From Ascidiella aspersa (taxonomy: Eukaryota): DNA of 64,000 nucleotides. The stretch's first letter is position 1; every line of letters begins with the position of its first letter. Of the stretch, positions 8,771 through 64,000 are shown one piece after another. The stretch is taken from contig OZ004612.1 in assembly GCA_963924565.1 (NCBI GenBank), positions 5,084,001 through 5,148,000 on the forward strand, in the 5' to 3' direction. Under the pieces are notes generated by a model that was not told the origin of the DNA, searched no databases, and saw nothing but the letters and a program-made list of their open reading frames with translations. A program made the translations under genes and the position numbers.

Positions 8771-9584
8771 CTACCTAACTAAAATACTTTATAACTTTCA
8801 AACTGTGATGACGAAATGGACAACAAAGACTGGCATGCTTTTGCGCACAAAACGAGCAAACATGTGTACGCGGATATGTGCGACACTTTAGATAAGTTGG
8901 GTATTACAAATGGTGGGTTGGGATCTTAATTTAATAAGTATTAAAAACTCGAAGTGTTCGCTCCAATGTATTTCTCAGCGATACCTTTACTTTGCGAACA
9001 AGACAAATGTTTCATAAAATGTACAATGGCTCTAAAAAGTATACAGTGGCTCTAAAAAACAGCATTTAAAGTTAAGTGCAGATTTAAAACATAAAAAACA
9101 AATTACAATTTATTACCTGTTTTGGGGATAGGATTGACTTACATTTTAGTCCAATGATGTTAAGAGGATATGAGAATATAAAATATGTTGCATATCACAT
9201 TTCAATCGAAATTCAAGAATAAATGTTGGGAATATTTAACAAATACATTTTCACGCTGTTTTTTTTGTTCCTGTGGCAGCAAACAGAACCAGTTTACTCA
9301 CACAAATAAAAGTCACATTAGGCTACTCAAGAAATGTTATTTGTTTTCCTAAAAAACATTTTCTTACTTGATGAATTAGCGTCAAACGCAATTGACACGC
9401 ATACCATGAAGAAACTATTTTAACCTTAAAAGATATCGTTATAAATCAATTTCACACTCAATCTGGTTCGTAACACAGAAGAAAGAAATCAAAATGTTGA
9501 AAAAGGGTGAAAAAGACAGAAGAAATATTGTAAATCGTTTCAAGAGCATTACTGGAAAACACGTAAATCAAAAGAAAATGATAT

Positions 9585-12500
9585 TTAATTTTTTTTTCCA
9601 ACGTTCGCATTCTCGTAGATCGCATCTGAAAAAAAAACAGAAACAAATCGTCAGCAATTTAGTTTATTTAATCCACTTTAATGAAGTCTTACCAGTTCCA
9701 GGCATGGAACCATCGTTCACATTTTCGTACGGGTTTTCCAAATCCTAAAATAATAAGATAAAGTTAAATGATTATTGTGTCCGTAGAACTAACATCGTTA
9801 TCAAAAGCTGAATTATGACCAGCTTTATATTCTATCCAGATATTACAAAAAAAACTTTGATTATACTGTAATGTTGACAGGCTGTCGCACAACCCTGCTT
9901 CATCAGGTCTAAGTAGAAATAAAAGCGTTCTTTTTGGAGGTACTTTAAAGCTGGTTACCTTTCCATGAGTTGGTCCACTGGAAGGGTTTACATCAACGTT
10001 TGCTGCTCCAGTACCTACAAAACAAATAATTTTTCGGCGAATACATTTGTAAGGTTTTAAGCCGTCTGCATGCAAAAGATTTAGTTTAAGTTACAACAAC
10101 CTAATTTAGCATGTACTTGTATAGGGCATGTCGCCATGTGGATATATCACACCTTTTAGACCGATTTTTTAAGTTAAAATAACTCATAATGTCAAGTATG
10201 TAAGCTGGGTTGAAGCATAATAGGAAGTATTGTAAATGACTTGACTAAAGTGCACAAATGACTTAGAGTTAAAATGAGCTGTTTTCATGAAGAATTTTTT
10301 TTATAAAATTGGGTTATGTCTTAATTATTGCATATAAAACAACTAGCTTGCTGTATGTTGCGCTTTTGTTGTATTTTAATTGAGTTATTTCTCATACTCT
10401 TTTAGCAAGTTTAGCGATTTAATAGATTAACGTTTTATGTTTATGACAAGGAGATGACTTGCTTCAAATATGACTTGACTCGGACTTGAGTTTGACTTGT
10501 CATTTACACAAACATAGTTTATTTAAACTTAATTTAGTTATTTTACAAATGACTTGACTGGGATTTAGGTCATTTTCAGTCATTTCACAATACTGCTATA
10601 GGTTATCTGTTTATCAACTAAATTGTAACGTACGTTATTACTATCAGGACACTTAGTTTTAAAAAGTAAAACTTACTTAAACAAAGCGGTTATTCGAATT
10701 AAATTTGAGTAATTTCGGCTTAAACTCTACCTAACTTAACATTTACTGCCACAACCATTAGAAGCTTTCGTCATTTAAATTTTAAAGTCCTTGTAAAATT
10801 GTGGCTTACTTTGTGAAGTGTAGGCAACAGTAGCAGGTTGTTTCGTTGTTATTTTCCTTCTGTAAGTAAAATAGAAAAATAATGACATTTCTTTGAATCT
10901 AGAGCCATTTGATGAGCCAACCCGCGCCCCCGTACCTGTCACGTGTTTTAGCGTTCCCTCTCAAATTCGCCCAGTTATAAGTAATTGTCAAAGTTTTTTT
11001 TTGTAAATATTAGACGTGCTATACAAGTAAAATAACATTTTAAGTGCCAATTTTGTGGAATAAAATTCTTTTTACAGTGAATCTAAAAAAATGAGCTATA
11101 CAAATAAAAAGTTGTGGGACTATTGTGTGGAATCGGCAAAGTGTCTGCAAATAAAATTTGATGAATGACGCTGTAACTTTAACTCTCTAGTCCATATGTG
11201 ATGCTTTACAGTCGGCAGCCGTATAAAATTTCTGTAATAATTTTCCCATTCATGTTAATAATTTCCCATTTATGTTAACTACCTTTTGAACACGACGGCG
11301 ACAACGATTAAAATGATCAGTAGAAGAAACAGCAGGCCGCCAACCACACCGCCAAATATAGCTGACGACACACCTGAAAGTAAAAACGTAAAACACGTGG
11401 AAATTGCAAGTAAAACTCTGTGTAAGTGACTAAACATAGCCTAAAACTTGGCTAGAAGGACGTAAGTAAAAAAAATGGTTTTAGCCAAAATTATTAGACA
11501 TCGGAATGCAATACGAAGTATAGGACATTCCACGCCGCAAGTATACCAAAAACAACAGAATTATCTAAAGATTACATACGGCAGCTGTCATAAATTTAGC
11601 GTCCCATGTCATAATATTTATTTGCCAACCGCTTGAAAATTTCAACGGAAAGCTTTCTTTAGATAACAGCCTACAGGTTGAATTTAAGCGAAAACAACGC
11701 ACGTGTTGACAAAAAAATAATTAATAGGAAATGCACTATAAGAGTTGCATACGTATGACAGCATTACAAACCAACAAAACAGCAGGTGTCATGCCTTACC
11801 GCCTGCGCCGGGTAATTCTGTTGTTGTCGTGGTCGATCGTGGAGTAATGCAGTGACCTTTAACAGGGGTTGGTTCACTTGCGCCTTCGCAAGTCTCCGCT
11901 TGGATCTAAACATTCAGTTGAACTTGTTGACAGAAGTACATAAATTCGTCCATTTTTATGTACTGCAATTATTAAATTCGAAGTGATCAGTATTGGAACA
12001 CATGGATCAAACGACGTTTTGTTAAGTAGTTCCCTACTATTTTCAACCAATATATTTGTGCTTGCTGTTCGTTAGATTATAACTTCGGGAACTCGTAAAC
12101 AAACCAAGTGGATTATATTTAACATAGCTGTGGATTTAATTACTACAGTAAATGTGTTTGGCAGACGTGGTCCGCATCCGGACCTTTGTAGTATAGAAAC
12201 GCATAAAGCATTTCCAATTTTTGAAATATGATAATAAAGTAAAAAAGCAAATTTTTAAGGTTTTTGGTACGATAACGAGAAACGTAAAGGGAAATCCCAT
12301 AAACCGACTTTAAGAAGAAAAAATTACTCGTATTTCAAGACATGTACGTTAACTAAAAGGTTGCAAGGCATGTAATTTGAATAGTCTAATGTGGTAAACC
12401 AAGGTTATCTGACAAAGTGTTTACCTTTGTTTCATGACGATTGCTAAAACTAGTTTAGAGTCCCTGGTTTAGACGTTTCACAGCAAATAAGAAAAATTAA

Positions 12501-15500
12501 AATTCAAAATTTGTATTATACCTTAGTACTTTTGTGTATCAGGTTGTTTTAGGTTGAAGTATAGCTACATTTTACAGAATTGAAAAAGGTCGTAGTTTGA
12601 TGGCCGTGGATGTTTTGCCAAGGACAAACAAATGGCGTTTACACTCACAAGCAACACTTACAGTCAGGTTTACATTCTGTACATTGCCATGCTTCTCTGG
12701 AGATAGTTGGACATTCAAGGTTTGGTTGTTTGCTTTGAATCTTTCTTGGGTTGTCGCATGTTGACTCGTTGCAGTAACCTACATTTAAACACAAAATACA
12801 GTTTAAGAGATCAAATGCGAATCATCTTCAAAGGTATTTAAAAAGAAAAATTGGCACAGTATATACTTTATACTGCAGTGAGGTTGAAACGTTTAACCCC
12901 GGCCATACCGGGACGGTCGTCTAGCAAATCAAAGCATGACTTGTGTAAGTTGATAATATTATCCACAGCACCGTTGTTTGCGTATGATGGTATGCACAGC
13001 ATGGTTAACAGCGAATTTTTTTACCAGTGCTGTAAACAAGTCATTTGCACTATAGCTTAACTTTAAGTCAAATCAATTTCAAAAATTATTCAGACACAGT
13101 ACGAATCCAACTAATTGCCACAGCAAGTCCGGTTCAAGTGAAGTATTAAAATTAGTAAATTTACCAAATCCCAAGCAATATTTTGCATAACAAACACCAA
13201 AAACGGAACAAAAGCGATCAATTTTTGTTACGGCTTAAACGAAAGGTAAATAACTCATTATAAATAAACGTTTCCAAAAATCGCTTCTATTTTTCACACA
13301 TGTGTATTGCTCTGATCAGGCCTACTTAAATTCGAACAACCACGTATAAACGTATATCGAAACATACACATGCTAGTGCAAATGTGATCTCGCCCTTCTG
13401 AAGTATTTTTTTGACCCACGATAATGGCCTATGTATTACCGAACACCGGAAGCCTTCGACAGATTAGCTGAACCAGTCGAACAAAGATGCAAGCAGACCA
13501 GGCTAGAAAAACAACTATAGCCTGCAGTGAGGTTTGAACTAGAAAACCGGGGCCATAACCTCATATAACATACAGGGGCTGTAACCTCAAATATATTCAA
13601 TAAAAGAAGCAACGACATATTGTCCTTTTTTCAATCTTCAGGTGTGGTATTATAACCTTTTATCGTAAGTTTATATAAATATTTAACGCGCGTGGCGTGT
13701 TGTTTTAAGGCCATTCAACTTTGCTTCGCCTCCACTGACCAGGTATGACTCGTTGTTACGTTGTGTGGGCGTGAAGATGACACAGGGAGTTGTTGAGTTC
13801 ACGAACGCTCCGATCACTCTTTCGGGTAATCCATATCCTGTTGTGACGTTGCTTGATGACTCGACTGTAAAGTTGCTGCAGCCAAGGAAAGAAGCCTTCA
13901 CCTAAAGTAACCAGTTGTTGTTTGCAAGTTAAGTGCACTATTGCCCAGTATTGTAACCAAGTTATTTTGAAATGACCCAAGTCCCAGTCAAGTCATTTAA
14001 AAACATAACAAGTCAAGTCTCCAATCTGGTCGTTTTACGTGCAACAATTGAGATAAATAACTCAATTTGACACAATGACTTAAGTCTAAGTCAAGTGAAG
14101 TCAATTGAAAAGAGTGAGGTACTTTTAAGTCAATTGAGTTATGTCGTTTTTAAAAGTCATTCATGTACGGATCTGTAAAGAAGCTTGATAATAAACCTTA
14201 AAATAAAAAAGATTGATCGTAGATAGACATAATCTTAATAAAGACTTCGATACGAAAACCTTTATAAGCGTTGTTTGGATATATTTCAGTCACTTTAACT
14301 GATGATATATGTTTAGATGCCGCTTTAAAAAAGAAGTTAAATTAGAGATGAATCACCTTGATGATATACTCAGATCTCCGTGTTAAACCAGGAATGACAG
14401 CCTTAAGCATTGCATACGAAGCTGCTTGTAATTTCGTTTTGTTGTCTTGCGTTGATTGCACCTCCACCTGCATAACGCATAACACAACACAATTGACCCG
14501 GATAGCATTTTATGTACAAACAATAAAAAAAAACAATAAAAAAAAGCTGATACTAAGAGTTTCAAAAACGAAAATAGTTCCAAAACGAAAAATATCCTTT
14601 AAATAAGGTTTAAAAATATATTTTTTGATAAAAACAAATTACGTCTTGGTTTTAATTTGTATACGGTACTAACAATATTACCACAAAAATCAGCAATAAC
14701 GTTTTCAAATTTATAGCGGTTTTTAAACAGTGTTTGGCAACGGGCACCAAAATATTAAAATAAGTTCGATGAACAATTAAAAGAGAAACAAATATTTAAA
14801 ATTAAGTCTTGTTTCAATTTGTGTACTACTAATATTAAAACACAAAACAGCAATAACGTTTTTAAACTTTCATAGCGGATTTTAAACAGTGTTCCGCACC
14901 GTGCCCCAAAATACTGCAATACCCATCGATGAACAACTAGAAAAGACGCAAATATTTAAAGGTTTTGTAAGACGAACAAAACGTGATTTAATTTACCTGC
15001 ATGTCAATTTTGTGTCCTGTTAACGAGAGCAGCTTGCTGAAATTATCCTGCCATTGTAGTTGGGCGAATGACGAATTGCTAGAGTCAACTGTAGCTGTCG
15101 TTTCCACTGTTAATGTAATAAAACCCATGTTAAATGATTTTAACGCCCGTTTTGTGCAATCTGGATAATTTACTACCTGTAGAGTGGGTCTTTTTAATGT
15201 TATAAAACGAAAACAAGTCAGAAATATCTCACTTTAATAAACGGGACAGTTTAATTCTTTGCTTGATTTTGACAGTAATTGTGTGCAAACTGGATAGCAT
15301 AATACCTTCATAAGGTAGAACTTTTTATGTTATAAAACAAAATCTAGTTACAGACTAACCCACTCCAATGAACCCAATCGGTTATTTAAACTTACCACAT
15401 TTGAGAGAAACAAGTTACAAAAATGAGCAACTCTATTGAAATGTTATTTATTGCAAAAACAAGCAGAACTTCCTTACGTTTATTTTGACACACATAATAT

Positions 15501-18500
15501 GCTTTTTCCCCGGTGCAATTTGCATTTGTAGCAATCCACCCATTCCCATAGTGTAAAACCTTTTGCTGGCAGGTTGAGGAATTTATGGGGTTAAAGTCTG
15601 CATTGGTCCCATCACCCCACAACCATTGCTGACTCGAAGGGTGCCATCTTGCCCCAATCGAAATCTTAACATCTGCGAACAACATCTTGGTGATAAGTTA
15701 ATTACGAAATAGGTATAGAATTACAACTGATTGTGTGAAAAACGACCATGCTCCATTCGTAGACATACCGCACTCGCGATTGTTTTTAACCTGCAGAATA
15801 TTTGCATTGAGTTTGCTTTTTTGTATGCGATGAAATTATTTATTAAGTAATAAATAAGCTAAAAATACTACATATTGCGGATAATTAGTTAGCTATTTTC
15901 CTTTTTTAGAGCACTGGAAAGCGAACTTTAAAATAACATTAAGAGCCACAACAAATTTTCGATTAAAGCAATTATAAAAATATCCTCTCGCAGAGATATT
16001 TTGTGAATTAGGAGTACAAAATATACCCTTTTAACGTTAACAGAAATTAAAAAAATCGAAATATGTGAACTGTATATATCCAGTGTTGTAATGACTTTTC
16101 TTTTTGCCTAAATGTCTGGACTTCTTAACTTGCTATTTGTTTCGTTTTTAATATTTGCAACGTAAAATATTGCTCAGAATAAAAAGTGTGTTGACAGATT
16201 TTTTAAGTTTAACTTTAAATTTTAATACCACTCAAGTGAATTGGATTTGACTTGTTATGGAAATGACTTAGACTGCGACTTGATTAGGGTAACTTATGAC
16301 TCACTGGGACTTAAGTCATTTCAAAAAAATATTTATTTACAGCACTGTATTTAATCATAAAGTAATGTAGTAATCGTGCTATAACGATATGTACCTGGGA
16401 CGAAAAATACTCCATGGTATTTAGTGTATTGACCATACGCCGCATTCGCATCTGTCAACCTTACAGAAGTGCCGCCCGAATTCTCATACGCATAGACAGG
16501 CTTGTATCCAGGTGTCGCGTCTTTGACAGCATACAGTTTGAAATTCTTAACCCATCCTGTAACAAAAGTTTAAAGTTAGACACAGCGTTTCTGTCTTCGT
16601 GAACCTACAAAATATCCAAACCTGTTGATACGCAACTTCCTTGTATTGCCACATACCAAAAGGTCCAACCGTATCTGCAGAAATGAATGGCTATTCTGTT
16701 TGGAGCCAACCTATAAAAGTCGTAGGACTGTTACTGAAGCCTTTAGCCATTTTATTGGCGATCCCACACAGACTTTTAGATAAATTTTAAATATTTAGTA
16801 GCCTACTTTTATTAAATATGATGTTGCTACCAGGCTTAGCATATACTGAAAAAAAGACTTGATATTTATTTGTTTACAGACGTTTCGGCTACCTATTATG
16901 CATGATTCTTTTTCATCGGGTACTGTAACAACACCACGCCAAAAAACAGGCAGAGTAAAACTACACAAATCCCTGATGAAAGCATACAGGATAGTTAGCC
17001 GAAGGTCGGGCTGGCATGCAGCTTTAAAGATAAAGTCATAAATTGACGTCTTTGTTTTTTTATAGAAACAAATGTAAAACTGAATTGGAGTCTAAATACA
17101 TTCAAAAAGGAGTCAGAGTGTGCCTTTGTTCAATCAAACTATTTTCTAAAATGAAATGCACTCCAGCTTTTTAATTATACACCAGATTTCAATAAGGCCT
17201 TCATAGACCCCCTAAAATCAGTCCACGGTTCCCAGTTTAAGAAACCCTGCAGTAAATAGACTGAATATTCAGCTTACGTGGTGAACAGATCAATGTATTG
17301 TAAATGACCAAGGCGACTTGTGCTTCTCCAAGATCCAACTTCTCCTTGCTGTTTCGAATATTTGTAGGAGTACGAGTTGTAGAAAATCCAGACCCTTGTC
17401 GTTTCTATACAAATGCCTTTATGTTTAGGAATTCAATGCAACACTACTTCGCGGCAGAATTATGCGCTTTGGTATGTTCTGGTGAATTACTCAATGGACG
17501 AGGTATTGCTCGCTAAACGGGTAATTGCAGCCCACAAAGCAGTAAAGTAGGTTTGTGTGAACCGGGTAATAAACCCATATAGGTTGCGGAATCTCTCACG
17601 TCGTATTATCCGAAATAGGTATATTTTGTTCTAAACAACCCGCTGCAGAGTTGGTTTGAAAATAACCGAAATGCGACTTCCGAGTCCAACTCCAGCCAAC
17701 TGCGTAATTTTGTCGAGTCCCGACTAAATGTGGTGTGTATTCAGCAATCAACTTATAGGCGTGTCATATAATACATTCACTCACCACACATGGATGAAAT
17801 ATATTCCACTATATGCAATTCCGCGTTTTATACAATTTACGGTTGGCGGCCATATCAGTTTCAAAATTTGGTACTGCGCATGGGTGTCGGACTTTTCAAA
17901 CACCTAAATTGGATCACCAGACATGTTTAACTCATATTATGGTCAACACTTTCTAAAAATATAACTTAAGCTGCACATAAAATAAAATAAAAAGTATTTT
18001 GCCTCATGTTTGTTTATCTGATTTTTTTTACACTTTTTTTATTTGACACTTTTCAAACCTTTTATATTTTAGGCCCACCCTACCGCGACTTACCACTTGC
18101 GTACTTCGCTTGAACTGCGTTGAGCAGCGAATCGTTTGTCCTTGCATCGCCAGCCGTAACCAGATTCCCTCCCAGCGACTTGCACTTGCTTTCAGCTGCA
18201 TTTGCGTCCAATAGATCGTCGGACAGTGTGAGAACGTTGCTTCCACTCACTGCTGTGCTTATTGGGCAACCTGGAAGCAGTAGACAACTGGTTAGGTTTG
18301 CTTAAAACAAGGATCGTTCAACTTTTTTGTAGCACAGACTCTTAAAAATATTTTGGATTGCGTGGAACAAGGTATGCATGAAATTTAGGGGATGACGTCA
18401 TGAATTGACGTCATCAAACAAATTCACCCAAGAAATCTGCTATAAGGGATTTAACTAATAAAATCAAGTAATAAAACTGAAAGAAATTCTAAATAAATTA

Positions 18501-21500
18501 GGAGTAGGCGCCAAAGCGTTTTTTTGTCTAATAAACTATGTTCTTTAAAACTTCAATCCATTTTTCAAATTACCAAGATCTCGATTAGACCTTAATAGAC
18601 CCTCTAAAACCAACCCACTTACCCCCAACGGGGTCAACATACCCCAGTTTAAGAACCCCTTGACTAAAGCAGGAGCACGTTTATTGCAGAGCTATTTAAT
18701 TGCAACAGATTAAAATTAATTTAGGGACGGAACTTAAAAACTGAAAAGACCATAACAACGTACTAGTGATGTTTGCTATCTAATAATAGTAATATATGAT
18801 TCACACTAATGACCCGTTCCGAAAGTAAAAACAAAACAAATTAACAGCTGGTATGAACATTTGTGCGATTTGATATTATCGTACGAAAGTAGGTTCAAGT
18901 AATTAAGTTATCAACCAGTAAAGTGCAGCGGACTTACCTTGAATTTGGCAATATCCAGTCACTATTCCGGTTCTACTGGTACAGGTACTTGTAAGGGCTT
19001 GGATCTACAAAAACGTTACAAATCGTTTGATTATAAACCGTTAATGTTTTCACTTGATGTTTTTTACCTTCAGGCTTATTTGATCGTTGTATCCGTGGTG
19101 TGATATAGGAACTTGCAAAGTTAGTTTGCTATTTGCTGATTCAGATTTCACGTCAAAATAATATGTGCTTGAATTTGAGTTGCTGGTGGAATCAACCTTT
19201 ATACAGAAAAAGTGACGGTTAAATGAAATTTCCCTTTGAAATACTGTATTCTAATCGTTGGACATGCAACTAACCTTGAACCACAATATTTTCTGGTTTG
19301 ACAGGTGGCTAGCGTCAGGATAGACTGCCACAATGCACTTTGCAGAATTCTCCACTCTAGCGTCGGGTGTTGGAGTTTTGAGTCCCGTTTTAGCAGCGAC
19401 TTGGGAACTTGTCACAAAAGTGCTGGAGCAGCCGGTAAAAGTGGCACGAACCTGAACGTTTGATAATAAACTGGTAAACACAATCAGATTTAATTTTATT
19501 CAAGTGTTAATCACTCTAGGGTGTAATATAACCTATCAGACTGGTTGGAAAATATTCAACTATATGCTATCATACCTTTGCGATTACAGTTTACAGCCTT
19601 ATAGCTTAAGCACATGCGCACGCCAAACTCGGGACTCAGGTAGTTTTGCGGATAGTCTTACTCGGGTCCCGAGCCCCACTCCAATAAAAAGAGTCAAGTA
19701 CCATGTCCCGAGTACGATTCCGACTCTTCAGCCCTGCCTTGCAGTGGTAGCTTGTGTAAGAAGCTCACTTTGTTAGTGAATACATCAGTGTTGTAATGAG
19801 TTAAGTCAATGACTCCACTTAAATGCACTAAGTCACTGTTTTTAAATGACTAGACTTGACTTAGGTATTTTGGGCAAAATGACTTGATTTAACTTGAGTC
19901 TTTTAGTTAAATGAGTTGACTTGACTTGGGTGAAAATGAAGTGTTCTTAAAAATCTGTTTGTTTTTTTATAAAATTGAGTTATTTATCCTAATTTTTGTA
20001 CACAAAAAAACGCTTGTTGTGTCCATGTTATGTATTGTGTCGAGTTATTGCTTATAATCGGACGAGTTCCTCATTAATAGTTTAACGTTTAATTCTTATG
20101 ACAATAAGGATTCGAAATTGACTGCTCTAATTATGATTTGACTGGGACTTTATTTGTTATTGATTCAAAAAGACTTGTTTACAACAAGTATGACAATATT
20201 GTTTGTGTTACACTGATGCTGTTCTAACAGCATTGTTTAGTGTGTATTAAATCATTCTATTAATTTGAATAGGAAATGAATCAGCATGGCTAAGCCAGTG
20301 AGCTGTTAGTAAGGTCCAGCACACTCATAAAGATTTCAGTTTCAAATTAAATCCACCAGTGTTTTCTCAAGTTCCAGTCAAGTAATTTGAAAAACAACTT
20401 AATTACAATTCTAAGTGGAGTCTTCAACCAACTTTAAACTATTATATTTGACCTATTTGAGCAATAACTTAACTAAAAATACCACCAAACGTAACATATT
20501 GCAAGCTAATTGTTTTATGCGCAAAATTTTATAAACCAATTTTATAAATAAATCTTAAATGAAAACACTTGAATTCAACCGAGGTCATTTGTCCAAAATA
20601 TTCAAGTCAAGTCAAGTCATTTGTCCAAAATATTCAAGTCAAGTCAAGTCATTTGTCCAATAGACCTAAGTCAAGTTAAATCATTTGTCCAGAATAACTA
20701 AGTCAATTTCACGTCAAATTATTTGAAATAGTGACAAGTGCACTTAAGTCGATTCATTAACTTAAGTCGGTACAACACTGAGTCTAGTAGCAAACTATCT
20801 TTCCGTAAGCCCCTCTAATGATTTACATTACTATTTTGCTCCCATACTGGAGCAGTTACTTTTCGCGATATATATTTTTACTTTGTACACATAAAGTGAC
20901 TTAAGTCAGGTACTAAATACCAAATATAAATGTAAGCCACTTACAGTGAAATTGAAGTCAGTGTTGGCTGCTAAGGCTGTTACTCTATAACTTCCAACTC
21001 CGTAGGCCAGAGTGCGGGAAATGGCGGTTGTTCCTTGCAAAACCTGAGACATAAAAGTACTTTTTGATATCTTAAGTGTCTATAAACCTTTGTTGCGCAA
21101 AATGGAAATTAATGCATGACATGCTGATTAAAATGCTAGAAGTCTTACCTGAGTTGTCAAAGAGCTGCCCTGTATGATGGCAATTTTTTGGAGGTTTTGA
21201 CTCCACAGAACATCGGCCACACTTGCATTGCATTGCTGTGTGGTTGTTGAGCTAGTCACTGGGAATATAACATTGAGAAGATAATTTTATATGCACACTT
21301 ACACGTAATTTACGTAATTTATATGCACACTTACACTTAATTTGGCAAGCGTAGTATATGTTTGTCCCTGTGCAGTCCACGTTGTCAGTCGTCCAGCCTC
21401 TGGAATACTTGTACGCCTTCTGCTGGCAACTTGTTCCTCCGGGGTTAAAGGAAGCTACTGAACCGTCGCTCCACAACCAAGTACTAGTTGTTGGGTTGTA

Positions 21501-24500
21501 ACGAGCTCCAATAAACACCCGAGATGTATCAATAACTGGACAAAATACCATAGTGTTCTAATAACTTAATGACTAAGCTTACTTTATTCTTTTTGGCATT
21601 TAAGTTAGGTAGTTGCAAAAAAATGGTTCGACTTGGGAACTATTAGGGCAAATGACATGACTTGTACTTATAAATCCACTTACTATTAAACAGAAAAATT
21701 TGTTGGGGTACACCCGAGCAAAACCAACTCATTATTTACATCATATTGTCCAGTTATTATCAGATGCATGGAAAAATTAAAATGTGACTTTTTAACATAA
21801 ATATTGGGAGATGCAACCCCAAAATATTCTTGGTTTATCCAATTAAATCGCAATTTTCTAACACTTAGTTCTGGTGAAAAATGCCTAAATAACAACCATC
21901 ATTGAAAGCAGACTTAATTTTCACAGTAATTTCGTCGTAAAATTACTTTGTATAGGCCAAGGTACAAAGTACCTACGGTCCATCAATATAAAGACTTGTT
22001 GTTTGATTTCGGAACTATAAATTATGGTGAATATGCTTTAGCGGTGAATGGCAAAAATTAAATCCGCCCTGTTTTAGTTTTGAAATGTATTGTATGTATT
22101 CAAAACTGCTAAATATCAAGGTAAAGCTGCTATCCTATTTCTTTTTTAACATTTTCGTTTTCTACAACGATTATATACCGGTCAGTGTGAGTGAAGAAAT
22201 TAGGGCGCCATCTTTAAAAATCTCATGCGATTCGGTTTGACATTTTCTCATCGTTTCGGAAAGAAAATTATTCTCATGTCAACCCTGATTTAGCCTGCTT
22301 TATTCGCTTCGCAATTACAGGAAGAAACACTTTTCGGGGCCTAGCTTTATTTGATACACACCTGCATAGATTATATATTCCTCTGCACTAAAACCGTTGT
22401 GGTAATCGTATCGGGTGGTTGTTAATCTGTTTCCCCAAGCTACGTCTTGAAGTCTTCTGTACTGATAGATGGTTTGATGTCCAGCTGCAGAACTTGAACC
22501 ATACAGGTCAAAATCGTAACCCCAGTCAATGTCTGTAAAGTTAAAAAACAGATTAACATTCACTTAATACTGAATAACACTTGAACGTAAAAAACGTGAA
22601 CGGTATACATATAAAATGAAAGATGGAGAAACATATTTGTGTTAACAACTGTGATCTAGCTCTTCTGAAGTTGTTAACACACATATGAGCAGCGAAAAGC
22701 CATTGCAGAATCATCAAATATGTCGATGAATAATGCAAGCAGGGCAGGCTAGAAAAACATGTAGCCTGTTGGAAGGTTCAAACTCACGACCTCCGGTCAA
22801 GCCGGGACCGTCGCTCTACCAACTGAGCCACACAGGCTCAGATAGGTGCGAGTAACATCTTGTTTGTACAGCAATAAGTTGTAGAACGGGATCCCCAGTT
22901 AAATCAACTTGAACCGTATCACATATGTATATTTGTAACTGGACCAATCACATCTCGCTATCCAATGGTAAAATGACTAGGCAACAACAGCGGTGACTTG
23001 TGTGGTTACAGCAGGCGATACAACTAAAAACCCGCGTATATCATAGTAGGTAGGACGACGACGCCAATATGGCCACGGCCGTGAGTTCGAATCTCACAAA
23101 TTCCTTTCTTGCAATCAAATCCTTATCGACCAACTTATTTCAGCTGGCCCAACGAGGCAACAAAACGTATCAAGTAACAACCGATTTCATTAATGGTTTC
23201 GTACCATTAACGTTCTGTTTTTGTTATTTGTTTGAATGTTGCTCAGTATTATTTGCGCTTGCATTTGAATCTGCGACTAAAACAATCACAGTAATTCAGG
23301 TAAAAAATATCGAAGAATATGTCGAAATTACCGACATGGAGAAGAAAAAATGCGAAGTATACGACTAGTGTAAATTTCATCACATATTAAAAGTATATCT
23401 AAGTTACATTTTTATCTCACTTTTTTTTTAAAATAAAACTTTTAATGGTGCTTCGCATTTACGCTTACACAAAGACCTGTCAAAATGTTAAAAAATGTTT
23501 TTTTTTTAAAAAAAAGGTAAAAAGATCATTTAACACAGACAGCAGATATGCAAAAACTGATCAAAATTGAATAAATTAAATCTTACATGTGTAATCGCAA
23601 GTTTTCTTTCTGATTTGCCATCTGTACTCATGATGTCGACAGAAGTATAGACGAGTTCTTCCAGTTGCCCACCTGAATGCATTAACACGTTGATTAACTT
23701 AACACAGTGAAAAAGAGTTTTACGCCCATTTCACAACGCACAGTTAGGCTAAGGTGTTTCGTAGCCTCCGGCTCATTTGGATTTAGCTTAATTTTGCATC
23801 CGTATACTTTAAGGAGATTAATACATACTGTATAGTATTGCAGGCCTTATTTTCTGATTTTGGACAGAAATAAAATTGCATCCTTTCAGAATTCCATCTT
23901 ATTAAGGTTATAAGAACTGAATAAGAATTAAAAAGATAGAACAACGTAATTTTGTACCTTCCGATTCATTTGAATTTTGCTTTTTTGTGTCAGCAAAGGC
24001 GCCTCATGCAATACAGCTTGTTTCGCGAGGCATTTCGTCCTAAAATTCGGTAAATTCTGACAATATCATGCCTGACAGTTTCTGACTGGAACGTTAGTTT
24101 AAGCTATGTTCAACGTGCATCCTATCAAACACACAACGTAATTTTTTGGCAGTGTTAGACTAGATTGCAGTGTTAGACTACTGCACCTAACATTAACTTA
24201 TCGTCGACCCGCGTTTAGCCTTGCACACAACTTTATAACGCTATGCGTTTCCCCAGTAGGCTCTATTAGGATTTCCTGTTTTAAATTTCGCCGTCGTCTT
24301 GGGTTTCAATGCACGCGTGGAGCGATAAACGACTGATAACATTAGTTCAAAGTCGCATGCTTGTTCTGTAAAACAGGATAAAAAAAATAAACTATGACGG
24401 CATACTCAATCGTATAATGATAAGACGAATTTGCGATAAAAAGCAGATAAAATGGAGAGGTCTCTATTTGCTATCTGTTGGTTTCATCTATTAAGGAGGT

Positions 24501-27500
24501 ATGGGATGGACGTTTCATCGCAAGATACATCGCCACAACTATAGAAATGCCCGATATTTACATTGATCGAGAAAATGTCTGATACTCTGAACAAAAATTA
24601 CCGCGATTCGCTCCGATACCAAATGACGTCATTACTATTCTCCACCGACGAACATTTTTTCTTTGGTGCATTTATTCGCAAAAATGCAGTTTACTAGCCA
24701 ACTCAATACTATGGGTATTAAGTTGGCTATTGGACTACATTTTTAAAACCAGTGCTTCTTCACCTTTTTTTGCGACCCACTTTTATTGCAAGTTTTATTG
24801 CGCGACCCACAATTATGACCAAACGAATGAAAAGCATATTAGTGAGAAAAGACGCAATATAATACGGATGCCAATTAGTATTAATGCGAAACTTGATTTT
24901 GCTTATGGGATATTATCAGATCAAGACGTATTTGTTACATTGCTACAAAAATGTTAGTTAATAATAATGCAATAATTTTCCGATCTAATAGAAAACTGTA
25001 ACATTTAGGAATGCTTCGCGAGCATCTGGTTGGGAAGCACTGTTTTAAACAATGGGCAACTAGATTTGGGAGTGATAATTAATTAATAAGGTTAAATTCC
25101 TAACATGTTGTATTAGTATTTTTTACGTGCTGACGAAACGTATGAAGGGTCAAATCCGTTCACCTCTGAATATACAGCTGCTTAACAGATTACACTCGTT
25201 CAATGTTCCTCTTGTAAAAAAACTTTGTTTGACGCCGATTATCGCTGATTATTTTCACACCTATTTCCGCCTTTACAGTAGAGCCTATATAATATGGTTT
25301 TCAATCACGTTTCTTGACACATGAGCTTACGTGCAGAAAGAACCCAAGTTGACGCGGTGAATGAAGAATCGTGAAGCGCGTCATCACCAGCTGACGTTTA
25401 CCAGATGACGTCATGAAGTGATGACGTAGGTCGCGAGAGAACTTCCCGCAACCCAAGTAATCATAAACTAACCAAGCGTGGACCGAGTTTCGCCAAAAAA
25501 TGAGGCCAAAGTCGGATTTAACTTTCACCGAAGTCGCCCTAACTTCTTTAACCTGGACAATCGATAAGACTATCTTTTTGCTTATGACGTGTACAAAGCA
25601 ACGATGTCAGGTCACAATGTCATCGATCGTTTTCCGGACATTTCAGTTTTTAGCAGGGAACACCTTGTAAATTTTCCGCGTTTCATTTACGGTTTGACCC
25701 GTCATTCGGATTTCAAATAAGTATACTTTCCCCTGGTTTGCAAACTATGTACTTATTTACATGCGACTAACGTCGACAGGAAAAACTAATTTCCCGGAGA
25801 ACAATTTCAAAAAGTATAGCAGGGAGAAAGGCAATTCGTCTCGTGTGACACAGATGACAAAATTTGCTGAGCACGTGAAACTCATTGTTTGGCCTTGGTT
25901 CTGCGTCTGCATATTTCCAAATCCGTTGAGTTTGTTTGAACGCAAAGACAGTGACTGGGTAGTATTCTACCATTTAAATACTTTTGCAAATATGTAACAT
26001 GACGTGCTCCTTTCTATAAAAGCTGAATTCTTCACAGCAGTGTTTTTCAAATTATATTAATTTCCGGGAGAACCATTTCGTAGAATGACAAATATTAGCT
26101 TTAATTACGCTGAAGATTTTGTATTTAAAGAAACCGTTTTTACCATATTTAAAAGCATTTTTTTGAATTTTTTTGAACAACGACTTTTTCAAATGTTTTG
26201 TATTGCACTGTACGATTTAGGCTTGATTCAATCACTCAAATACTTAAAGTTACTTGCTGCAAATTTAAACTAGCAAGGCATTTTTTTGTCATACTCACGT
26301 TGTATAGAGATCAATGTACCACACACTTTCCCCAGTAACGCCCTTCGTTGATTTCCAAGGCCCAGTTTCGTTGGGGCTTTTCGAAAACTTGTAAACTTTA
26401 TCGTTGGTCGGTTGGTAAAAGACATACACCCTTTGGATGCCTGTGGATAAATAACAGCAAAAAAGTGAACGAAGCAATACTCCAACCACTTGTCCGTTAT
26501 ATTGCAATACATGCGAAGTTAGGTGCCAGCTATACAGGTAACTCTATGGGGATTATACAACGATTCTGGATACACTTTTATTTTGGAGTCAATAAACCCC
26601 TTCAAAGTCTGTAAACAGGTTTGAGGTATCCTCTGGTTTATTGAAAACTAAAAGAATTTGCTTATACTTAAGGCAACTGTTTAAGAGTTAACGCATTTTT
26701 AATTTAATTCGACTACAGTGTTTTAGTTCAATTTGACTTGTTTTTAGTAAATTTAAGCTCATTCTTTAAAAAATGAAGTGTGCGTAAGCTTAATGAATCT
26801 TTCGGGTCTCTGATTAAAAATACAATAGGCGGGGCGAATAAATACTAGAAATTGTTAAAATGGGCTGCGTACAACTACTAGACAGGATGTGGGTTGCCAA
26901 ATCCTGATTAAAATCAATCTCTGTTATTTTTCTATGCTCACTTCACCGGTCGACAATGTGGTGTTGCAAATATACGCCCCACGCCCCATGTAGGTGCTGT
27001 GCTTAGCAAGTCAACACACCTGCTCTGTATTTGCTGTCAAGAGCTGTTGTAAGGCTAGTTTTTATCTGGGTATCTTTAGCTGAGGCGAGATGTCCTCCCA
27101 GCTTGACACATTCCCCCTCAGCTGTGTCCGCATCGACTTGGTCATTTGATAAAGTCAGAACACTGTCCTTGACGCCAAAAGTCGTCAGCTCACAAGCTAA
27201 GAAAACAAACGCCGTAGGACTAGTCAAAAATGCAAAAAAACAGCTGATGTTGTTCCATAAAAATAACAGTTTACAATTATGCAACCTTTTAACAATGAAA
27301 AGTTTTTCGACCAGTAAGGTGAACCAAACCCATTGACTAATTTTACTGAAAATAATAAATGCAAAATAACACCGTATATAATCAAATCTTCGTTACTACA
27401 AGAATAAACAATCAGTTATTTGACTGAGTTTAAGGAATTTTCTGTTTTTTTTAGATCAAATAAATTTGTTAATATACCCGAATCTTGGATCAATACATTA

Positions 27501-27620
27501 TAAATAATAAAAATTAACAAACAACATATTTTATTCCCGTACGGATGAAGACCTTACCTGCTTTGACCCTGTTTTGGTGTCCCAATAAAAACAAAAGAAA
27601 ACACAAATCCAACTTTTCAT
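9585..27620 (-). CDS. Type-I membrane receptor with 2x[split C-type-lectin-like domain + inserted domain + 2 FN3-like domains], TM and Tyr-motif tail (copy 1, ~1020 aa, 26 exons)
   Basis: Exons in transcript order: 27558-27620 (signal; 1 nt short). Unit 1: 27020-27196, 26299-26440, 23587-23672, 22362-22532, 21335-21535, 21149-21258, 20945-21043, 19275-19451, 19068-19196, 18938-19004. Unit 2: 18094-18270, 17278-17404, 16622-16710, 16395-16556, 15478-15672, 14997-15106, 14357-14467, 13740-13901, 12662-12778, 11800-11905. TM 11283-11373. Tail 10810-10859, 9959-10014, 9693-9744, 9585-9625. All GT-AG, and phases join into one ORF from exon 2 to the stop. CTLD motifs AEGECVKLGGHLAS / FIGARY..WLWSDG..C..GW..C..YACQ; FN3-like IPGLTRRSEYIIKV. 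AATAAA on - at 9109-9114. Confidence 0.85.
11283..11373 (-). CDS. Transmembrane exon of the lectin/FN3 receptor (copy 1 only)
   Basis: Encodes GVSSAIFGGVVGGLLFLLLIILIVVAVVFKR, followed by basic stop-transfer RK in the next exon; ttcag acceptor and gtagtt donor; phase 1 to phase 2. Confidence 0.9.
14635..14960. repeat. ~165-bp intronic tandem duplication (2 units in copy 1, 1 unit in copy 2 at ~52095-52255)
   Basis: gtcttg..aatttgt...cagcaataacgttt...atagcgg.ttttaaacagtgtt...ccaaaata...tcgatgaacaa...aaatatttaaa is repeated. Confidence 0.7.
20357..20780. mobile_element. MITE of the 'GACTTGAC/AAGTCA' family with internal ~30-bp tandem repeats
   Basis: CAGTGTT...TACAACACTG ends; gtcatttgtccaaaatattcaagtcaagtcaa repeated at 20584-20700. 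Confidence 0.7.
22735..22840 (-). mobile_element. tRNA-derived SINE
   Basis: On the - strand: A box TGGCTCAGTTGG, B-box-like GAGTTTGAACC, then a non-tRNA 3' tail TTTTTCTAGCCTGCCCTGCTTGC shared by other copies (34400-34508, ~60530-60635; partial at ~13490-13560, ~12860-12925, ~50860-50930). Confidence 0.75.
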
Positions 27621-28774
27621 ATTGTTTAATTTGCACCTTTAACTTGACACTGGAAAAAACAAATTTGTTAACTCTGATATATCCCTCAAGAAAAACTAGT
27701 CGCTATATAGTTTGGTTTAATTTCCCTGATCATCGACACACCATAAAAAAAACTGAGTAAAACCAGTCGCCGTACTTCATAAGGAAACTGTAGTTTATTG
27801 CCACTGATTCACTGTTTGAAAGTTGCGACCCTCGATATCGATTCCTTATTTATTACGTCATTAAAGCGCATGCAGTATGGTGGAGGCAGTTGCGCTTTTT
27901 TTGAAAACACTACCTACTCAGCTGGGTCCTACTGGGTTGCTTTTGTTGGCTATATGAGCTAAAGAGCAGTACCAGGCCCATGGAATAATGCGGACCATTT
28001 TAAACTTAATATACACACTACCTAAAGCTTTTTTGTTCCATGAGCTTCCAATATAATTACTTTAAACTTAAAATCAAGTAGAAGATCTGCTGTGAAAAAA
28101 GAAAATATTTAAAAAAGAGATATGCAGCACGAAAATTGTGTATAATTACAAAAATACCTATAATTGTGACTTGTCGTAAATATTGCCGTATTAGCGAACA
28201 GGCCGAAAACGATGAGCTTTTAGAACAGGTAAGAATTACCTATAATTGTGACTTATCTTAAATATAGGCCTACTGACGAACAGAACTAAAGTGATGGGGT
28301 TTCTAATAAAAAAAAGATCAGATAAAAATCGACCTGTATTTGTGGGTTTACATATGAAAAAAAAGTGAAACAATATTTTGTTGTCGTATAACACAACACC
28401 GTTAATAGCCTAAAACGCTTGGAACGTCAGTGGCTGAACCAATCTAAAGTCTCGCGTTTCTATATTTAACGTCCAAACGCAGATGTGTAGCCAGGGTATT
28501 TCGCGTCCAGGGAAAACTATAAAATTGGCGCCTCCTCCTCCATGTTTAATCACGTTTTCTATTACATTAGCATAATATAGCTTACCTTATGCTGAAAAAC
28601 AATTCAAATTTTAATAAAACAATGCATTTAAAAAAGAAGCAGCCACATTTAGGCATTTGTAACATTCATTTTGGCGCCCCTGTACTTTGGCGCCTGGGGC
28701 ATACGTACCCCACCGTCCCATTTAGATAAGCCTCTGTTCAAACGTCAGGGAGAGTTTCCAAAGAAAAGCTGTCA

Positions 28775-62600: not shown

Positions 62601-63740
62601 CCACCAATGGGCAACTAGATGTAGGAGTGATAATTAATTAATAAGGTTAAATTCCTAAATTGTTGTATTGGTATTTTTTACGTGCTGACGAAACGTATGA
62701 AGGGTGAAATACGTTCACCTCTGAATGTACAGCTACTCAACAGATTACACTCGTTTAATGCTACTCTATAAAATGACTTTATTTTGCTGCTACATCTATT
62801 TCCGCTTGTACAGACCTTGGTTTTCAGTCACGTATTTGACACATGAGCTTCCGTGCAGACAGAACGCGAGTGAACGCGGAAAAAGAAGAATCAATCGTGA
62901 AGCGCGTCATCACCAGCTGACGTTTACCGGATGACGTCATGATGTGATGACGTAGGTCACGAGAGAACTTCACGCAACCCAAGTACCGGTAATCATAAAA
63001 TAACCAAGCGTGGACCGAGTTTCGCCGAAAATGAGGCCTAAGTCTAATTTAAGTATTACCGAAGTCGCCCTACCTTCTTCAACCTGGACAATCGATAAGA
63101 CAATCTATTCAGTTTTGTTTTTTTATGACGTCTACAAAGCGGCAATGTCACGTCACAATGTCATCGATCGTATCCTGACATTTCAGATTTAAGCAAGAAA
63201 CACCTTACAAACTTTTAATGTTTTATTTACAATGTAACCCGTGCTACGGATTTCAAATAAGTATACTGTCACCTGGTTTGCAAATAATTAGAATTTATTA
63301 ATTTACTTGCGACTGGCGTAGACAGAAAAAACAATTTTTTGCAAAAAAAACGTAACATGATATATATTGGGCTGACTTTAATTTAGACTGGGGATTTGTA
63401 TACTAAAAGAAACCGTTTTTACCATATTTAAAAGCATTTTTTTAATTGTTTCCTTTTAAACACCTTCAAATTGTTTCGCAAACACACGACTTTTTAAATG
63501 TTTTATATTGCACTGTACGATTTAGGCTTGATTCAACCATTCAAATGCGTAAAGTTACTTGCTGCAAATTCAAACTAGAAAGGCAATTTTTTTCTCACGT
63601 TGTATAGAGATCAATGTACCACACACTTTCCCCAGTAACGCCCTTCGTTGATTTCCAAAGCCCAGTTTCGGCGGGTCTTTTCGAAAACTTGTAAACTTTA
63701 GTGTTGGTCGGTTTGTAAAATACATACACCCTTTGAATGT
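47626..63740 (-). CDS. Paralog (or allele) of the split-lectin/FN3 receptor lacking the TM exon; predicted secreted form; 5' exons lie beyond the window end
   Basis: Exons 63599-63740, 61389-61474, 60157-60327, 59130-59330, 58944-59053, 58740-58838, 57101-57277, 56894-57022, 56764-56830, 55934-56110, 54752-54878, 53951-54039, 53724-53885, 52800-52994, 52298-52407, 51856-51966, 51110-51271, 50104-50220, 49394-49499 are all open with intact splice sites. No TM exon between 48873 and 49394. Splicing to 48873 gives ...PDAS-EGK* (TAA 48863-48865). Tail exons remain down to 47626 but fall out of frame. Confidence 0.78.
53403..53676. mobile_element. MITE of the abundant 'GACTTGAC/AAGTCA' family (representative copy)
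   Basis: TIRs CAGTGTTGTA ... TACAACACTG with internal gacttgac repeats. Many intronic copies: ~1865-2270, 4797-4975, ~5440-5617, ~10205-10594, ~13945-14160, 16081-16347, 19786-~20187, 20357-20780, ~31322-31680 and counterparts in copy 2. Confidence 0.8.
55003..55283. mobile_element. Copy-2-specific foldback/MITE-like insertion built from AAAATGTGCG / CGCACATTTT repeats
   Basis: Absent at the matching copy-1 site (~17512). Flanked by a 9-bp direct repeat GCTTAACGG (54994-55002, 55284-55292). Internally inverted, with a central (CTAACT) microsatellite. A related partial copy at ~34506-34630 shares the CAACAGGGAC end. Confidence 0.75.
60530..60635 (-). mobile_element. tRNA-derived SINE (duplicate of 22735-22840)
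   Basis: Near-identical to the copy-1 element. Confidence 0.72.
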
Positions 63741-64000
63741 CTGTAGATAAATACCGGTAAAAAAGTGAAAGAAGCAATACTCCAACCACTTGTCTGTTAT
63801 ATTACAATACAGGCAAAGTTAGGTGCCAGCTATACAGGTAACTCTATGGGGATTATACAACGATTCTGGATACACTTTTATTTTGGAGTCAACAAACCCC
63901 TTCAAAGTCTGTAAACATGTTTAAGGTATCCTCTGGTTTATTGAAAACTAAAAGAATTTGCTTATACTTAAGGCAACTGTTTAAGAGTAACGCATTTTTA

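What the first reader, a model, noticed from the sequence alone, without database searches (positions are those of the whole stretch)
9585..27620. Hidden 26-exon signalling receptor: two ancient tandem units + stalk + TM + tyrosine-motif tail
Seen: two 10-exon units (1359 and 1356 nt) share the same exon order and phases but have diverged strongly, showing an old internal duplication. They are followed by a Thr-rich stalk (PRSTTTTTELP), a TM helix and a ~65-aa tail: RRKITTKQPATVAYTSQ...DLENPYENVNDG...DAIYENANVGKKN*. Known: YxN is the Grb2 SH2 consensus and YxxQ the STAT3 docking consensus. No catalytic domain is present. Inference: an adaptor-coupled recognition receptor, possibly for immunity, allorecognition or gamete recognition.
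Basis: partly seen in the sequence, partly recalled or inferred. Interest (0 to 1): 0.85.

Follow-up and report, generated by a model that had tools for sequence, protein, structure and literature searches.

The report
Phosphatase-less copy of lectin receptor phosphatase
The 26-exon membrane-receptor gene is really there, but it is a cut-down copy of a sea-squirt receptor tyrosine phosphatase that lost its enzyme part in a 12.9-kb deletion, and this copy also has a one-base frameshift in its first exon, so the proposed signalling tail is a leftover rather than a purpose-built docking site.

Summary
The anatomy holds. On the minus strand, 27620 to 9585, I rebuilt 26 exons with GT-AG introns. 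They form two 10-exon units with identical phases (1359 nt each by my donors), then a TM exon and a 66-aa tail.

The interpretation changes in three ways.

1. **Frameshift in exon 1.** Exon 1 lacks one T that four paralogues have. The ORF from the ATG therefore stops three codons into exon 2.
2. **The tail is a remnant of a phosphatase gene.** It matches the juxtamembrane segment of a receptor tyrosine phosphatase (RPTP). Neighbour gene B has the same exons followed by two phosphatase domains. Genes g1-g4 share a ~12.9-kb deletion that removed both domains, and the stop codon lies on the scar.
3. **Only one Tyr motif is conserved.** The last YEN is kept in both RPTP paralogues. YENV is YEIA in gene B, and YTSQ is absent from gene A.

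Each unit is a C-type-lectin-like domain split by an orphan ~130-aa insert, followed by an FN3-like domain. The family has over 100 units on this chromosome, mostly next to phosphatase exons.

Substitutions show purifying selection (omega about 0.3-0.4), yet all four phosphatase-less copies carry lesions.

No RNA evidence could be obtained. The scan has already noted this family in other windows of the same genome.

The parts
27558..27620 (-). Exon 1 (signal-peptide exon). It is 63 nt and one T short of the 64 nt seen in four paralogues, so it leaves in phase 0 instead of phase 1.
27020..27196 (-). U1E1: N-terminal half of the C-type-lectin-like domain of unit 1 (phase 1 in, 1 out). A GAG acceptor at 27188 is the only in-frame rescue.
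   Evidence: Profile A2 finds only CTLD chains.
26299..26440 (-). U1E2: first exon of the inserted domain.
23587..23672 (-). U1E3: second exon of the inserted domain.
22362..22532 (-). U1E4: third exon of the inserted domain.
   Evidence: 48 matches in the same genome.
21335..21535 (-). U1E5: C-terminal half of the lectin-like domain of unit 1.
   Evidence: Profile A1 finds only CTLD chains. 127 matches in the same genome.
20945..21258 (-). U1E6 (21258-21149) and U1E7 (21043-20945): FN3-like domain.
   Evidence: The gene A counterpart of E7 hits Pfam fn3 at E 0.0033.
18938..19451 (-). U1E8 (19451-19275), U1E9 (19196-19068) and U1E10 (19004-18938): a second beta-rich module and a Cys linker.
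18094..18270 (-). U2E1: N-terminal half of the lectin-like domain of unit 2.
16395..17416 (-). U2E2 (17416-17278), U2E3 (16972-16878, or donor at 16893) and U2E4 (16556-16395): inserted domain of unit 2.
15478..15672 (-). U2E5: C-terminal half of the lectin-like domain of unit 2.
12662..15106 (-). U2E6 (15106-14997), U2E7 (14467-14357), U2E8 (13901-13740) and U2E9 (12778-12662).
11800..11905 (-). U2E10: Cys linker plus Thr-rich stalk. It is homologous to U1E10.
11283..11373 (-). Transmembrane exon, followed by basic residues.
   Evidence: Kyte-Doolittle 3.44 over 19 aa. Only four copies in the genome.
9693..10859 (-). cyt1 (10859-10810, YTSQ), cyt2 (10014-9959) and cyt3 (9744-9693, NPYENV). 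These match the juxtamembrane exons of RPTP gene B.
9585..9625 (-). cyt4: truncated first part of the RPTP wedge exon (YENA), ending in a stop codon at the deletion scar (about 9600-9588).
8835..9588 (-). 3' flank, homologous (83-84%) to the DNA just 3' of the last PTP-D2 exon of gene B. This is the right side of the ~12.9-kb deletion.

Best explanation
The locus is a phosphatase-less derivative of a two-unit lectin/FN3 receptor-type protein tyrosine phosphatase.

Shown:
- The ancestral gene looked like neighbour gene B: signal peptide, two ectodomain units, TM helix, juxtamembrane segment, and PTP domains D1 and D2.
- Each unit is a C-type-lectin-like domain split by a ~130-aa insert, then an FN3-like domain, a second beta module and a Cys/Thr linker.
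- A ~12.9-kb deletion removed both PTP domains. It fused the first codons of the wedge exon to the gene's 3' end and created the stop codon.
- The deleted gene was then amplified into four tandem copies, g1 to g4.
- The copy in the finding, g1, has a 1-nt deletion in exon 1. As assembled it cannot make the full protein.

Inferred:
- The phosphatase-less form was kept by selection for some time. An intact allele would give a type I membrane protein that binds the same ligands as its RPTP relatives but cannot dephosphorylate.
- It would therefore act as a non-catalytic counterpart: a competitor or modulator.
- The conserved juxtamembrane YEN tyrosine is a possible phospho-docking site.
- This copy is most likely a recently disabled member of a birth-and-death family.

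The confidence given is for the whole statement. The origin by deletion from an RPTP I hold at about 0.9, and the non-catalytic-counterpart function at about 0.3.
For: - Exon model and phases.
- Frameshift in exon 1 against four paralogues.
- Gene B has collinear PTP D1 and D2 exons on the same strand after cyt3. PF00102 matches lie at C6:5047168 and C6:5049742.
- Gene A has the same 10-exon unit, a TM exon and two PTP domains. Its Pfam PF00102 hits are collinear, with E down to 3.7e-17.
- cyt4 aligns to the start of gene B's wedge exon and then loses the frame.
- g1 9588-8835 aligns at 83-84% to gene B -25975..-25031, which lies 3' of D2.
- cyt4 is identical in g2-g4.
- No PTP exon was found in the window or anywhere 3' of it in the fetched region.
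- Selection: dN/dS of g1 against B is 0.39 over 931 codons, 0.24 in the lectin halves and 0.67 in the insert.
- Copy-specific changes are 11 synonymous and 11 nonsynonymous in g1, and 37 and 38 over the four copies. That gives omega about 0.3.
- Both lectin halves find only CTLD chains in the PDB, in register.
- Family size and co-location with PTP exons.
Against: - No transcript evidence was available.
- All four phosphatase-less copies are damaged. g1 has a frameshift. g2 has no TM exon and no U2E3. g3 has a frameshift, a stop codon and no U2E3. g4 is a one-unit chimera with a 2-nt deletion. This fits plain decay as well.
- The omega values rest on few changes, and gene conversion could bias them. 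Identity between copies is mosaic, 97% in some tracts and 80% in others.
- CTLD and FN3 assignments rest on weak E-values (0.003 to 0.7), because exons had to be searched one by one.
- No orthologue from another species could be examined.
Confidence: 0.5

Rival explanations
1. Dead-on-arrival pseudogenes. The 12.9-kb deletion killed the gene, and the four copies are non-functional remnants that have only been copied and homogenised since.
For: - Every phosphatase-less copy has at least one disabling lesion.
- The C-terminus is an accident of a deletion junction.
- Identity between copies is mosaic, which points to gene conversion that could import selected variation.
- An earlier follow-up on the neighbouring copy reports that no expression was seen. 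I did not check this.
Against: - Copy-specific substitutions show omega about 0.3 in all four copies, 37 synonymous against 38 nonsynonymous, where about 2.4-3.4 to 1 nonsynonymous is expected under neutrality.
- All splice sites and exon lengths are kept in g1.
- The lesions are all different, so each arose after the copies separated.
Confidence: 0.27
2. This is a purpose-built, adaptor-coupled signalling receptor whose phosphorylated YxN and YxxQ motifs recruit Grb2-type and STAT-type SH2 proteins.
For: - Two YxN motifs and one YxxQ motif are present.
- YEN next to the wedge region is kept in RPTP paralogues A and B.
- YxN phosphorylation sites are reported in the C-termini of R3 RPTPs, including Ciona proteins (PMC5336234).
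- The Grb2 and STAT3 consensus motifs are from my own knowledge (Songyang 1994; Stahl 1995).
Against: - The motifs are inherited from an RPTP juxtamembrane segment and were not assembled for this gene.
- YENV is YEIA in gene B, and YTSQ is absent from gene A.
- Short motifs of this kind are common by chance.
- There is no ITAM or ITIM.
- This copy's ORF is broken.
- There is no evidence of expression or phosphorylation.
Confidence: 0.13
3. Assembly artefact. The exon-1 frameshift is a homopolymer error, and g1 is an intact, functional gene.
For: - The lesion is a single base in a run of T's, four here against five in the paralogues.
- Every other exon and splice site of g1 is intact.
Against: - The run is short.
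- The 28 bases just upstream (-40 to -12) also differ from the other copies, so the region has really diverged.
- The lesions in sister copies are not in homopolymers.
- The assembly has only 75 contigs, which suggests accurate long reads. That is my inference.
Confidence: 0.15

Closest known systems
Classical receptor-type protein tyrosine phosphatases with tandem D1-D2 domains (LAR/R2A, CD45/R1, RPTP alpha/R4)
   Same: - Paralogues A and B are type I proteins with an FN3-containing ectodomain, one TM helix, a wedge-type juxtamembrane segment and two PTP domains.
- They carry the NRY, DYINA, FWxMxW, WPD and HCSAGxGRTG motifs.
   Different: - The ectodomain carries C-type-lectin-like domains split by an orphan insert. 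As far as I know, no vertebrate RPTP subtype has this.
- The gene in the finding has lost both PTP domains.
NK-cell-type and Dectin-1-type C-type-lectin-like receptors (CD94/KLRD1, Dectin-1)
   Same: - These are the best PDB sequence matches of the C-terminal lectin half.
- No EPN or QPD sugar and calcium motif is present (read).
- They belong to tandem, fast-evolving gene families.
   Different: - Those are type II proteins with one uninterrupted CTLD and ITIM or hemITAM tails, or adaptor pairing.
- This one is type I, has two split CTLDs plus FN3, and derives from an RPTP.
YxN phosphotyrosine sites of RPTPs (C-terminal YxN of R3 RPTPs; Tyr789 of RPTP alpha binding Grb2)
   Same: A YxN tyrosine sits in the cytoplasmic part of an RPTP lineage (PMC5336234). 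The RPTP alpha case is from my own knowledge.
   Different: - Here the motif lies before the PTP domain, next to the wedge, not at the C-terminus.
- Phosphorylation is untested.
Non-catalytic or truncated receptor variants (for example the phosphacan and short forms of PTPRZ; decoy receptors; paired receptors such as KIR and Ly49)
   Same: The ectodomain is the same as that of a catalytic or inhibitory relative, the signalling part is different or missing, and the genes sit in a tandem array with many pseudogenes.
   Different: - It was made by a genomic deletion and then gene amplification, not by alternative splicing.
- No charged TM residue for adaptor pairing is present.
- No function has been shown.

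Membership tests
Receptor-type protein tyrosine phosphatase | At least one cytoplasmic PTP domain with the HC(X5)R signature | tested here: not met
   No PTP exon lies in the window or 3' of g1-g4 (tblastn with gene A PTP exons). The feature is met in paralogues A and B. g1 descends from an RPTP but is not one.
Receptor-type protein tyrosine phosphatase | Type I topology: signal peptide, ectodomain, single TM helix, juxtamembrane wedge | tested here: inconclusive
   The TM exon and basic stop-transfer residues are present. The signal-peptide exon is frameshifted in this copy. The wedge exon is cut after about 12 codons.
C-type lectin-like domain superfamily | CTLD sequence signature: alpha-1 helix A..C..GG.LAS, WIGL-type strand, WxWxDG, and four Cys C1-C4 | tested here: met
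   Both halves, searched apart as profiles, hit only CTLD chains and in register. For E1 these were PLA2R, type II antifreeze protein and FcRY, at E 0.07-0.7. For E5 they were CD94, Dectin-1 and CLEC4b1, at E 0.14-5. Pfam Lectin_C scored E 0.11 on U2E1. Each E-value alone is weak.
C-type lectin-like domain superfamily | Calcium and sugar site (EPN or QPD plus WND) | tested here: not met
   No EPN or QPD is present in any E5 sequence (alignment A1).
Fibronectin type III domain | Match to the fn3 profile | tested here: inconclusive
   Only the gene A counterpart of E7 hits PF00041, at E 0.0033 and below the cut-off. The window's own E6 and E7 exons gave nothing.
ITAM / ITIM immunoreceptors | ITAM: YxxL/I, 6-12 residues, YxxL/I. 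ITIM: (S/I/V/L)xYxx(I/V/L). | tested here: not met
   The tail read has YTSQ, YENV and YENA. The +3 residues are Q, V and A, and the -2 residues are V, N and A. The spacing from Y2 to Y3 is 14 residues. No motif fits either pattern.
Grb2-SH2 (pYxN) and STAT3-SH2 (pYxxQ) docking sites | Motif present and conserved in relatives | tested here: inconclusive
   The motifs are present. YEN at the third site is kept in genes A and B. The second site is YEIA in B. YTSQ is kept in B but has no counterpart in A. No orthologues were available.
Grb2-SH2 (pYxN) and STAT3-SH2 (pYxxQ) docking sites | Tyrosine is phosphorylated and binds the SH2 domain | not testable with these tools
   This needs biochemistry.
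Ricin-B / beta-trefoil (lead for the insert) | Sequence similarity of the insert exons to QxW repeats | tested here: not met
   The only library hit (P0001) vanished when the intron-encoded residues were removed from the query, with scores below 0 bits.

The most novel reading that the evidence does not exclude
The array is an RPTP-based paired-receptor system in a non-vertebrate chordate. Catalytic lectin/FN3 phosphatases and phosphatase-less counterparts with near-identical ectodomains are kept side by side by selection, and copies are gained and lost quickly. This would be analogous to the inhibitory/activating receptor pairs of vertebrate NK cells, and it could serve self/non-self or microbe recognition. 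The split lectin domain with its orphan insert would be the variable recognition module.
Probability: 0.15. Interest if true: 0.8.

Novelty: new variant of a known kind. Interest (0 to 1): 0.5.

Why it matters
- The case shows how a receptor with a short "signalling-looking" tail can arise in one step from a receptor phosphatase by deletion. It is a warning against reading short tyrosine motifs as designed docking sites.
- It places the gene in a very large, chromosome-restricted family of lectin-headed receptor phosphatases in a sea squirt. I found no description of this family in the paper library.
- If the phosphatase-less copies are expressed, the locus would be a testable example of catalytic and non-catalytic receptor pairing outside vertebrates.
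- The lectin-like domain interrupted by a phase 1-1 exon cassette of unknown fold is an unusual architecture in its own right.

Tried and rejected
- **RNA evidence.** No run ids were available.
- **Library search with the insert ORF.** It gave one hit, a metagenomic subtilase with six ricin-type repeats. The hit depended on translated intron residues and on summing six repeats. With the exon alone all scores were negative. I rejected it.
- **ESM Atlas on U1E4.** RHS/YD-repeat clusters scored 0.88 with low recognition. This is a weak lead only.
- **Pfam on single exons.** Nothing beyond weak Lectin_C and fn3 hits.
- **PDB profiles of the insert exons.** Only chance hits.
- **TM exon search.** It found only the four local copies.
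- **Literature.** Searches for lectin-type RPTPs in ascidians found nothing relevant.
- I replaced it with ORF references.
- **Joined model.** So there is no whole-domain Pfam scan, no structure prediction and no full-length homology search.
- **Other ideas rejected.** I considered an ITAM/ITIM reading (membership test) and an upstream in-frame ATG that could rescue exon 1. The needed frame has no ATG.
Full report
**Observation**

The window has low G+C (33-39%) and holds no long bacterial-type ORFs.

Reading the minus strand directly, I placed 26 exons between the ATG at 27620 and the stop at 9587-9585. A script then checked each exon separately for flanking dinucleotides, phase and translation.
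- All 25 introns are GT-AG.
- After exon 1 come two sets of ten exons with the same phases: in 1,1,2,1,1,1,0,0,0,0 and out 1.
- Each set totals 1359 nt by my donors.
- For U2E3 a second donor at 16878 (95 nt instead of 80) is the one preserved in the paralogue gene B. I prefer it, and unit 2 is then 1374 nt.
- The Thr-rich "stalk" is the end of the tenth exon of unit 2, which is homologous to the tenth exon of unit 1.
- A TM exon follows, with Kyte-Doolittle 3.44 over 19 residues and then basic residues.
- Four small exons then give a 66-residue tail with YTSQ, NPYENV and IYENA.
- The two units are 35% identical in protein. Seven of the ten exon pairs are individually better than nearly all of 300 shuffles.

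**The open reading frame is broken**

With exon 1 as assembled, the frame entering exon 2 is wrong and a stop follows after three codons. The exon total, 3071 nt, is not a multiple of three.

I aligned exon 1 with its four paralogous copies in the surrounding 234 kb.
- All four have 64 nt and leave in phase 1, which fits exon 2.
- The copy in the finding has lost one T from a run of five.
- The frame it would need has no ATG.
- The only in-frame rescue is a GAG acceptor 8 nt inside exon 2.

A homopolymer error therefore cannot be excluded, and I give it about 15%.

**The neighbourhood**

The window contains a ~26-kb tandem duplication. The chromosome around it (C6:5.00-5.24 Mb, fetched) holds a small array.
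- **Gene A:** one unit, opposite edge of the array.
- **Gene B:** two units, plus strand.
- **g1:** the finding.
- **g2:** no TM exon, and U2E3 replaced by unrelated DNA.
- **g3:** a 1-nt deletion in U1E1, a stop in U1E4, and U2E3 lost.
- **g4:** a single chimeric unit made of U1E1-7 and U2E8-10, with a 2-nt deletion in U1E6.
- **A fragment** with two insert exons.

Exon lengths and splice sites are otherwise conserved throughout.

**What the tail is**

Downstream of gene A's TM exon, on the same strand, lie exons with the classical protein-tyrosine-phosphatase motifs. Pfam PF00102 matches them collinearly for two tandem domains, with E down to 3.7e-17.

Gene B, after its cyt1-cyt3 exons, continues with an exon that begins with the same Tyr-Glu-Asn motif. 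That exon runs on into the helix that precedes PTP domains, then into D1 (WPD and CSAGVGRTG present) and D2.

The last exon of g1 aligns to the start of that gene B exon. It then loses two bases and ends in a stop. From the stop onward, g1 (9588-8835) is 83-84% identical to gene B DNA that lies just 3' of its last D2 exon.

So g1 differs from a gene B-type RPTP by a deletion of about 12.9 kb that removed both phosphatase domains. g2-g4 have an identical last exon, so the deletion came before their amplification. No PTP exon exists in the window or further 3' in the fetched region.

The "tyrosine-motif tail" is therefore the juxtamembrane remnant of a receptor phosphatase, and its C-terminus is a deletion scar.

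**Conservation of the motifs**

No orthologues could be reached, so I used the paralogues.

| Site | g2-g4 | Gene B | Gene A |
|---|---|---|---|
| Y1 (YTSQ) | identical | kept | no counterpart |
| Y2 (NPYENV) | identical | NPYEIAV: Tyr kept, Asn lost | no counterpart |
| Y3 (YEN) | identical | kept (TYENV) | kept (NYENT), just before the wedge |

Identity in g2-g4 says little, because those copies are young. No ITAM or ITIM pattern is present.

YxN is the Grb2-SH2 consensus and YxxQ the STAT3 consensus (my own knowledge). YxN phosphorylation sites are reported in the C-termini of R3 RPTPs, including Ciona proteins (PMC5336234). So one conserved candidate site exists. The three-motif docking platform is not supported.

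**Domains**

I searched exon by exon only and made no joined model.
- **Lectin halves.** A profile of the five E5 peptides finds four PDB sequences, all C-type-lectin-like and all in register with the C-terminal half: CD94, Dectin-1 twice, and CLEC4b1.
- A profile of E1 finds five PDB sequences, all CTLDs, at the alpha-1 helix: PLA2R, two type II antifreeze proteins, FcRY, and a CTLD protein.
- The E-values are weak (0.07-5), but the specificity and register are convincing.
- There is no EPN or QPD motif.
- **The insert.** Between the two halves lie three exons, E2-E4, of 399 nt in unit 1 and 396 or 381 nt in unit 2. They form a phase 1-1 cassette, so skipping them would give an uninterrupted lectin domain.
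- These exons have no recognisable relatives. The single library hit was an artefact of translated intron. The Atlas lead to YD repeats is weak.
- **FN3.** E6-E7 look FN3-like; gene A's E7 hits fn3 at E 0.0033.

**Family size**

The E5 peptide has 127 matches in this genome, nearly all on the same chromosome. They fall in clusters at 5.0-5.2, 7.2-8.1, 27.85-28.04, 29.0-29.55, 30.04-30.24 and 31.3-32.6 Mb.
- The insert exon lies beside many of them.
- PF00102 matches fall in the same clusters, typically 3-9 kb downstream on the same strand.
- Pairs of E5 exons 4-7 kb apart upstream of one PTP show that the two-unit form is widespread. The internal duplication is therefore old.
- The TM and tail type of the finding exists only in the four local copies.

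**Selection**
- g1 against gene B: 90 synonymous and 128 nonsynonymous differences over 931 codons, dN/dS 0.39.
- By region, dN/dS is 0.24 in the lectin halves and 0.67 in the insert.
- Changes unique to one copy number 11 synonymous and 11 nonsynonymous in g1.
- Summed over the four phosphatase-less copies they are 37 and 38. The site ratio is 3.4 to 1, so omega is about 0.3.

The exons are real coding sequence, and the phosphatase-less form seems to have been constrained after the deletion. All four copies are nevertheless damaged in different ways. This pattern fits birth-and-death evolution. Gene conversion (mosaic identity) and the small counts weaken the argument.

**Verdict**

Three things were missed: it derives from a receptor phosphatase, its C-terminus is a deletion scar, and the first exon of this copy is frameshifted.

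The most likely reading is a recently disabled member of a phosphatase-less offshoot of a large lectin/FN3 RPTP family. An intact allele would act as a non-catalytic counterpart of the neighbouring phosphatases.

Other windows of this scan have reported the same family on this chromosome. I reached the phosphatase link independently, before reading those notes.

Noticed in passing
L013/L014 (window coordinates about -68.4k to -77.3k, minus strand; C6:5.0067-5.0156 Mb): Gene A is a compact single-unit receptor tyrosine phosphatase. It has a split lectin-like domain, an FN3-like domain, a long Ser/Thr stalk, a TM helix and two PTP domains. It sits at the edge of the array.
   Followed up: yes
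L015-L017 (window coordinates -58609 to about -26.5k, plus strand): Gene B is a two-unit receptor tyrosine phosphatase that looks intact. It is the nearest full-length relative of the finding. Its second tail tyrosine reads YEIA.
   Followed up: yes
Window 47626-64000, continuing to about 64876 in L021: Second copy, g2. The TM exon is missing, and exon U2E3 has been replaced by unrelated sequence, which would shift the frame in unit 2.
   Followed up: partly
L024-L025 (window coordinates 92047-104537): Copy g4 is a one-unit chimera of U1E1-7 joined to U2E8-10. It looks like the product of unequal crossing-over between the two units, and it has a 2-nt deletion in U1E6.
   Followed up: partly
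Window 19786-20177 and 20430-20780 (intron between U1E7 and U1E8): A dispersed repeat in inverted orientation, with dozens of 70-80% identical copies on many chromosomes. It is probably a transposable element.
   Followed up: no
Window 13428-17639 against 18075-23796: Identity between g1 and g2 is mosaic, about 80% in one tract and 97% in the next. In the diverged tract g1 resembles gene B more than g2 does, for example in U2E3. This suggests gene conversion.
   Followed up: partly
C6:27.85-28.04 Mb (not fetched): A cluster with many lectin and insert exon matches but only one PTP match at its edge. It may be another phosphatase-less subfamily.
   Followed up: no
Window 14636-14960: Two tandem copies of a ~165-bp unit inside the intron between U2E6 and U2E7.
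   Followed up: no
Window 27632-27660: The 28 bases from -40 to -12 before the ATG of g1 differ from the four other copies, which agree with each other. Further upstream the homology resumes.
   Followed up: partly
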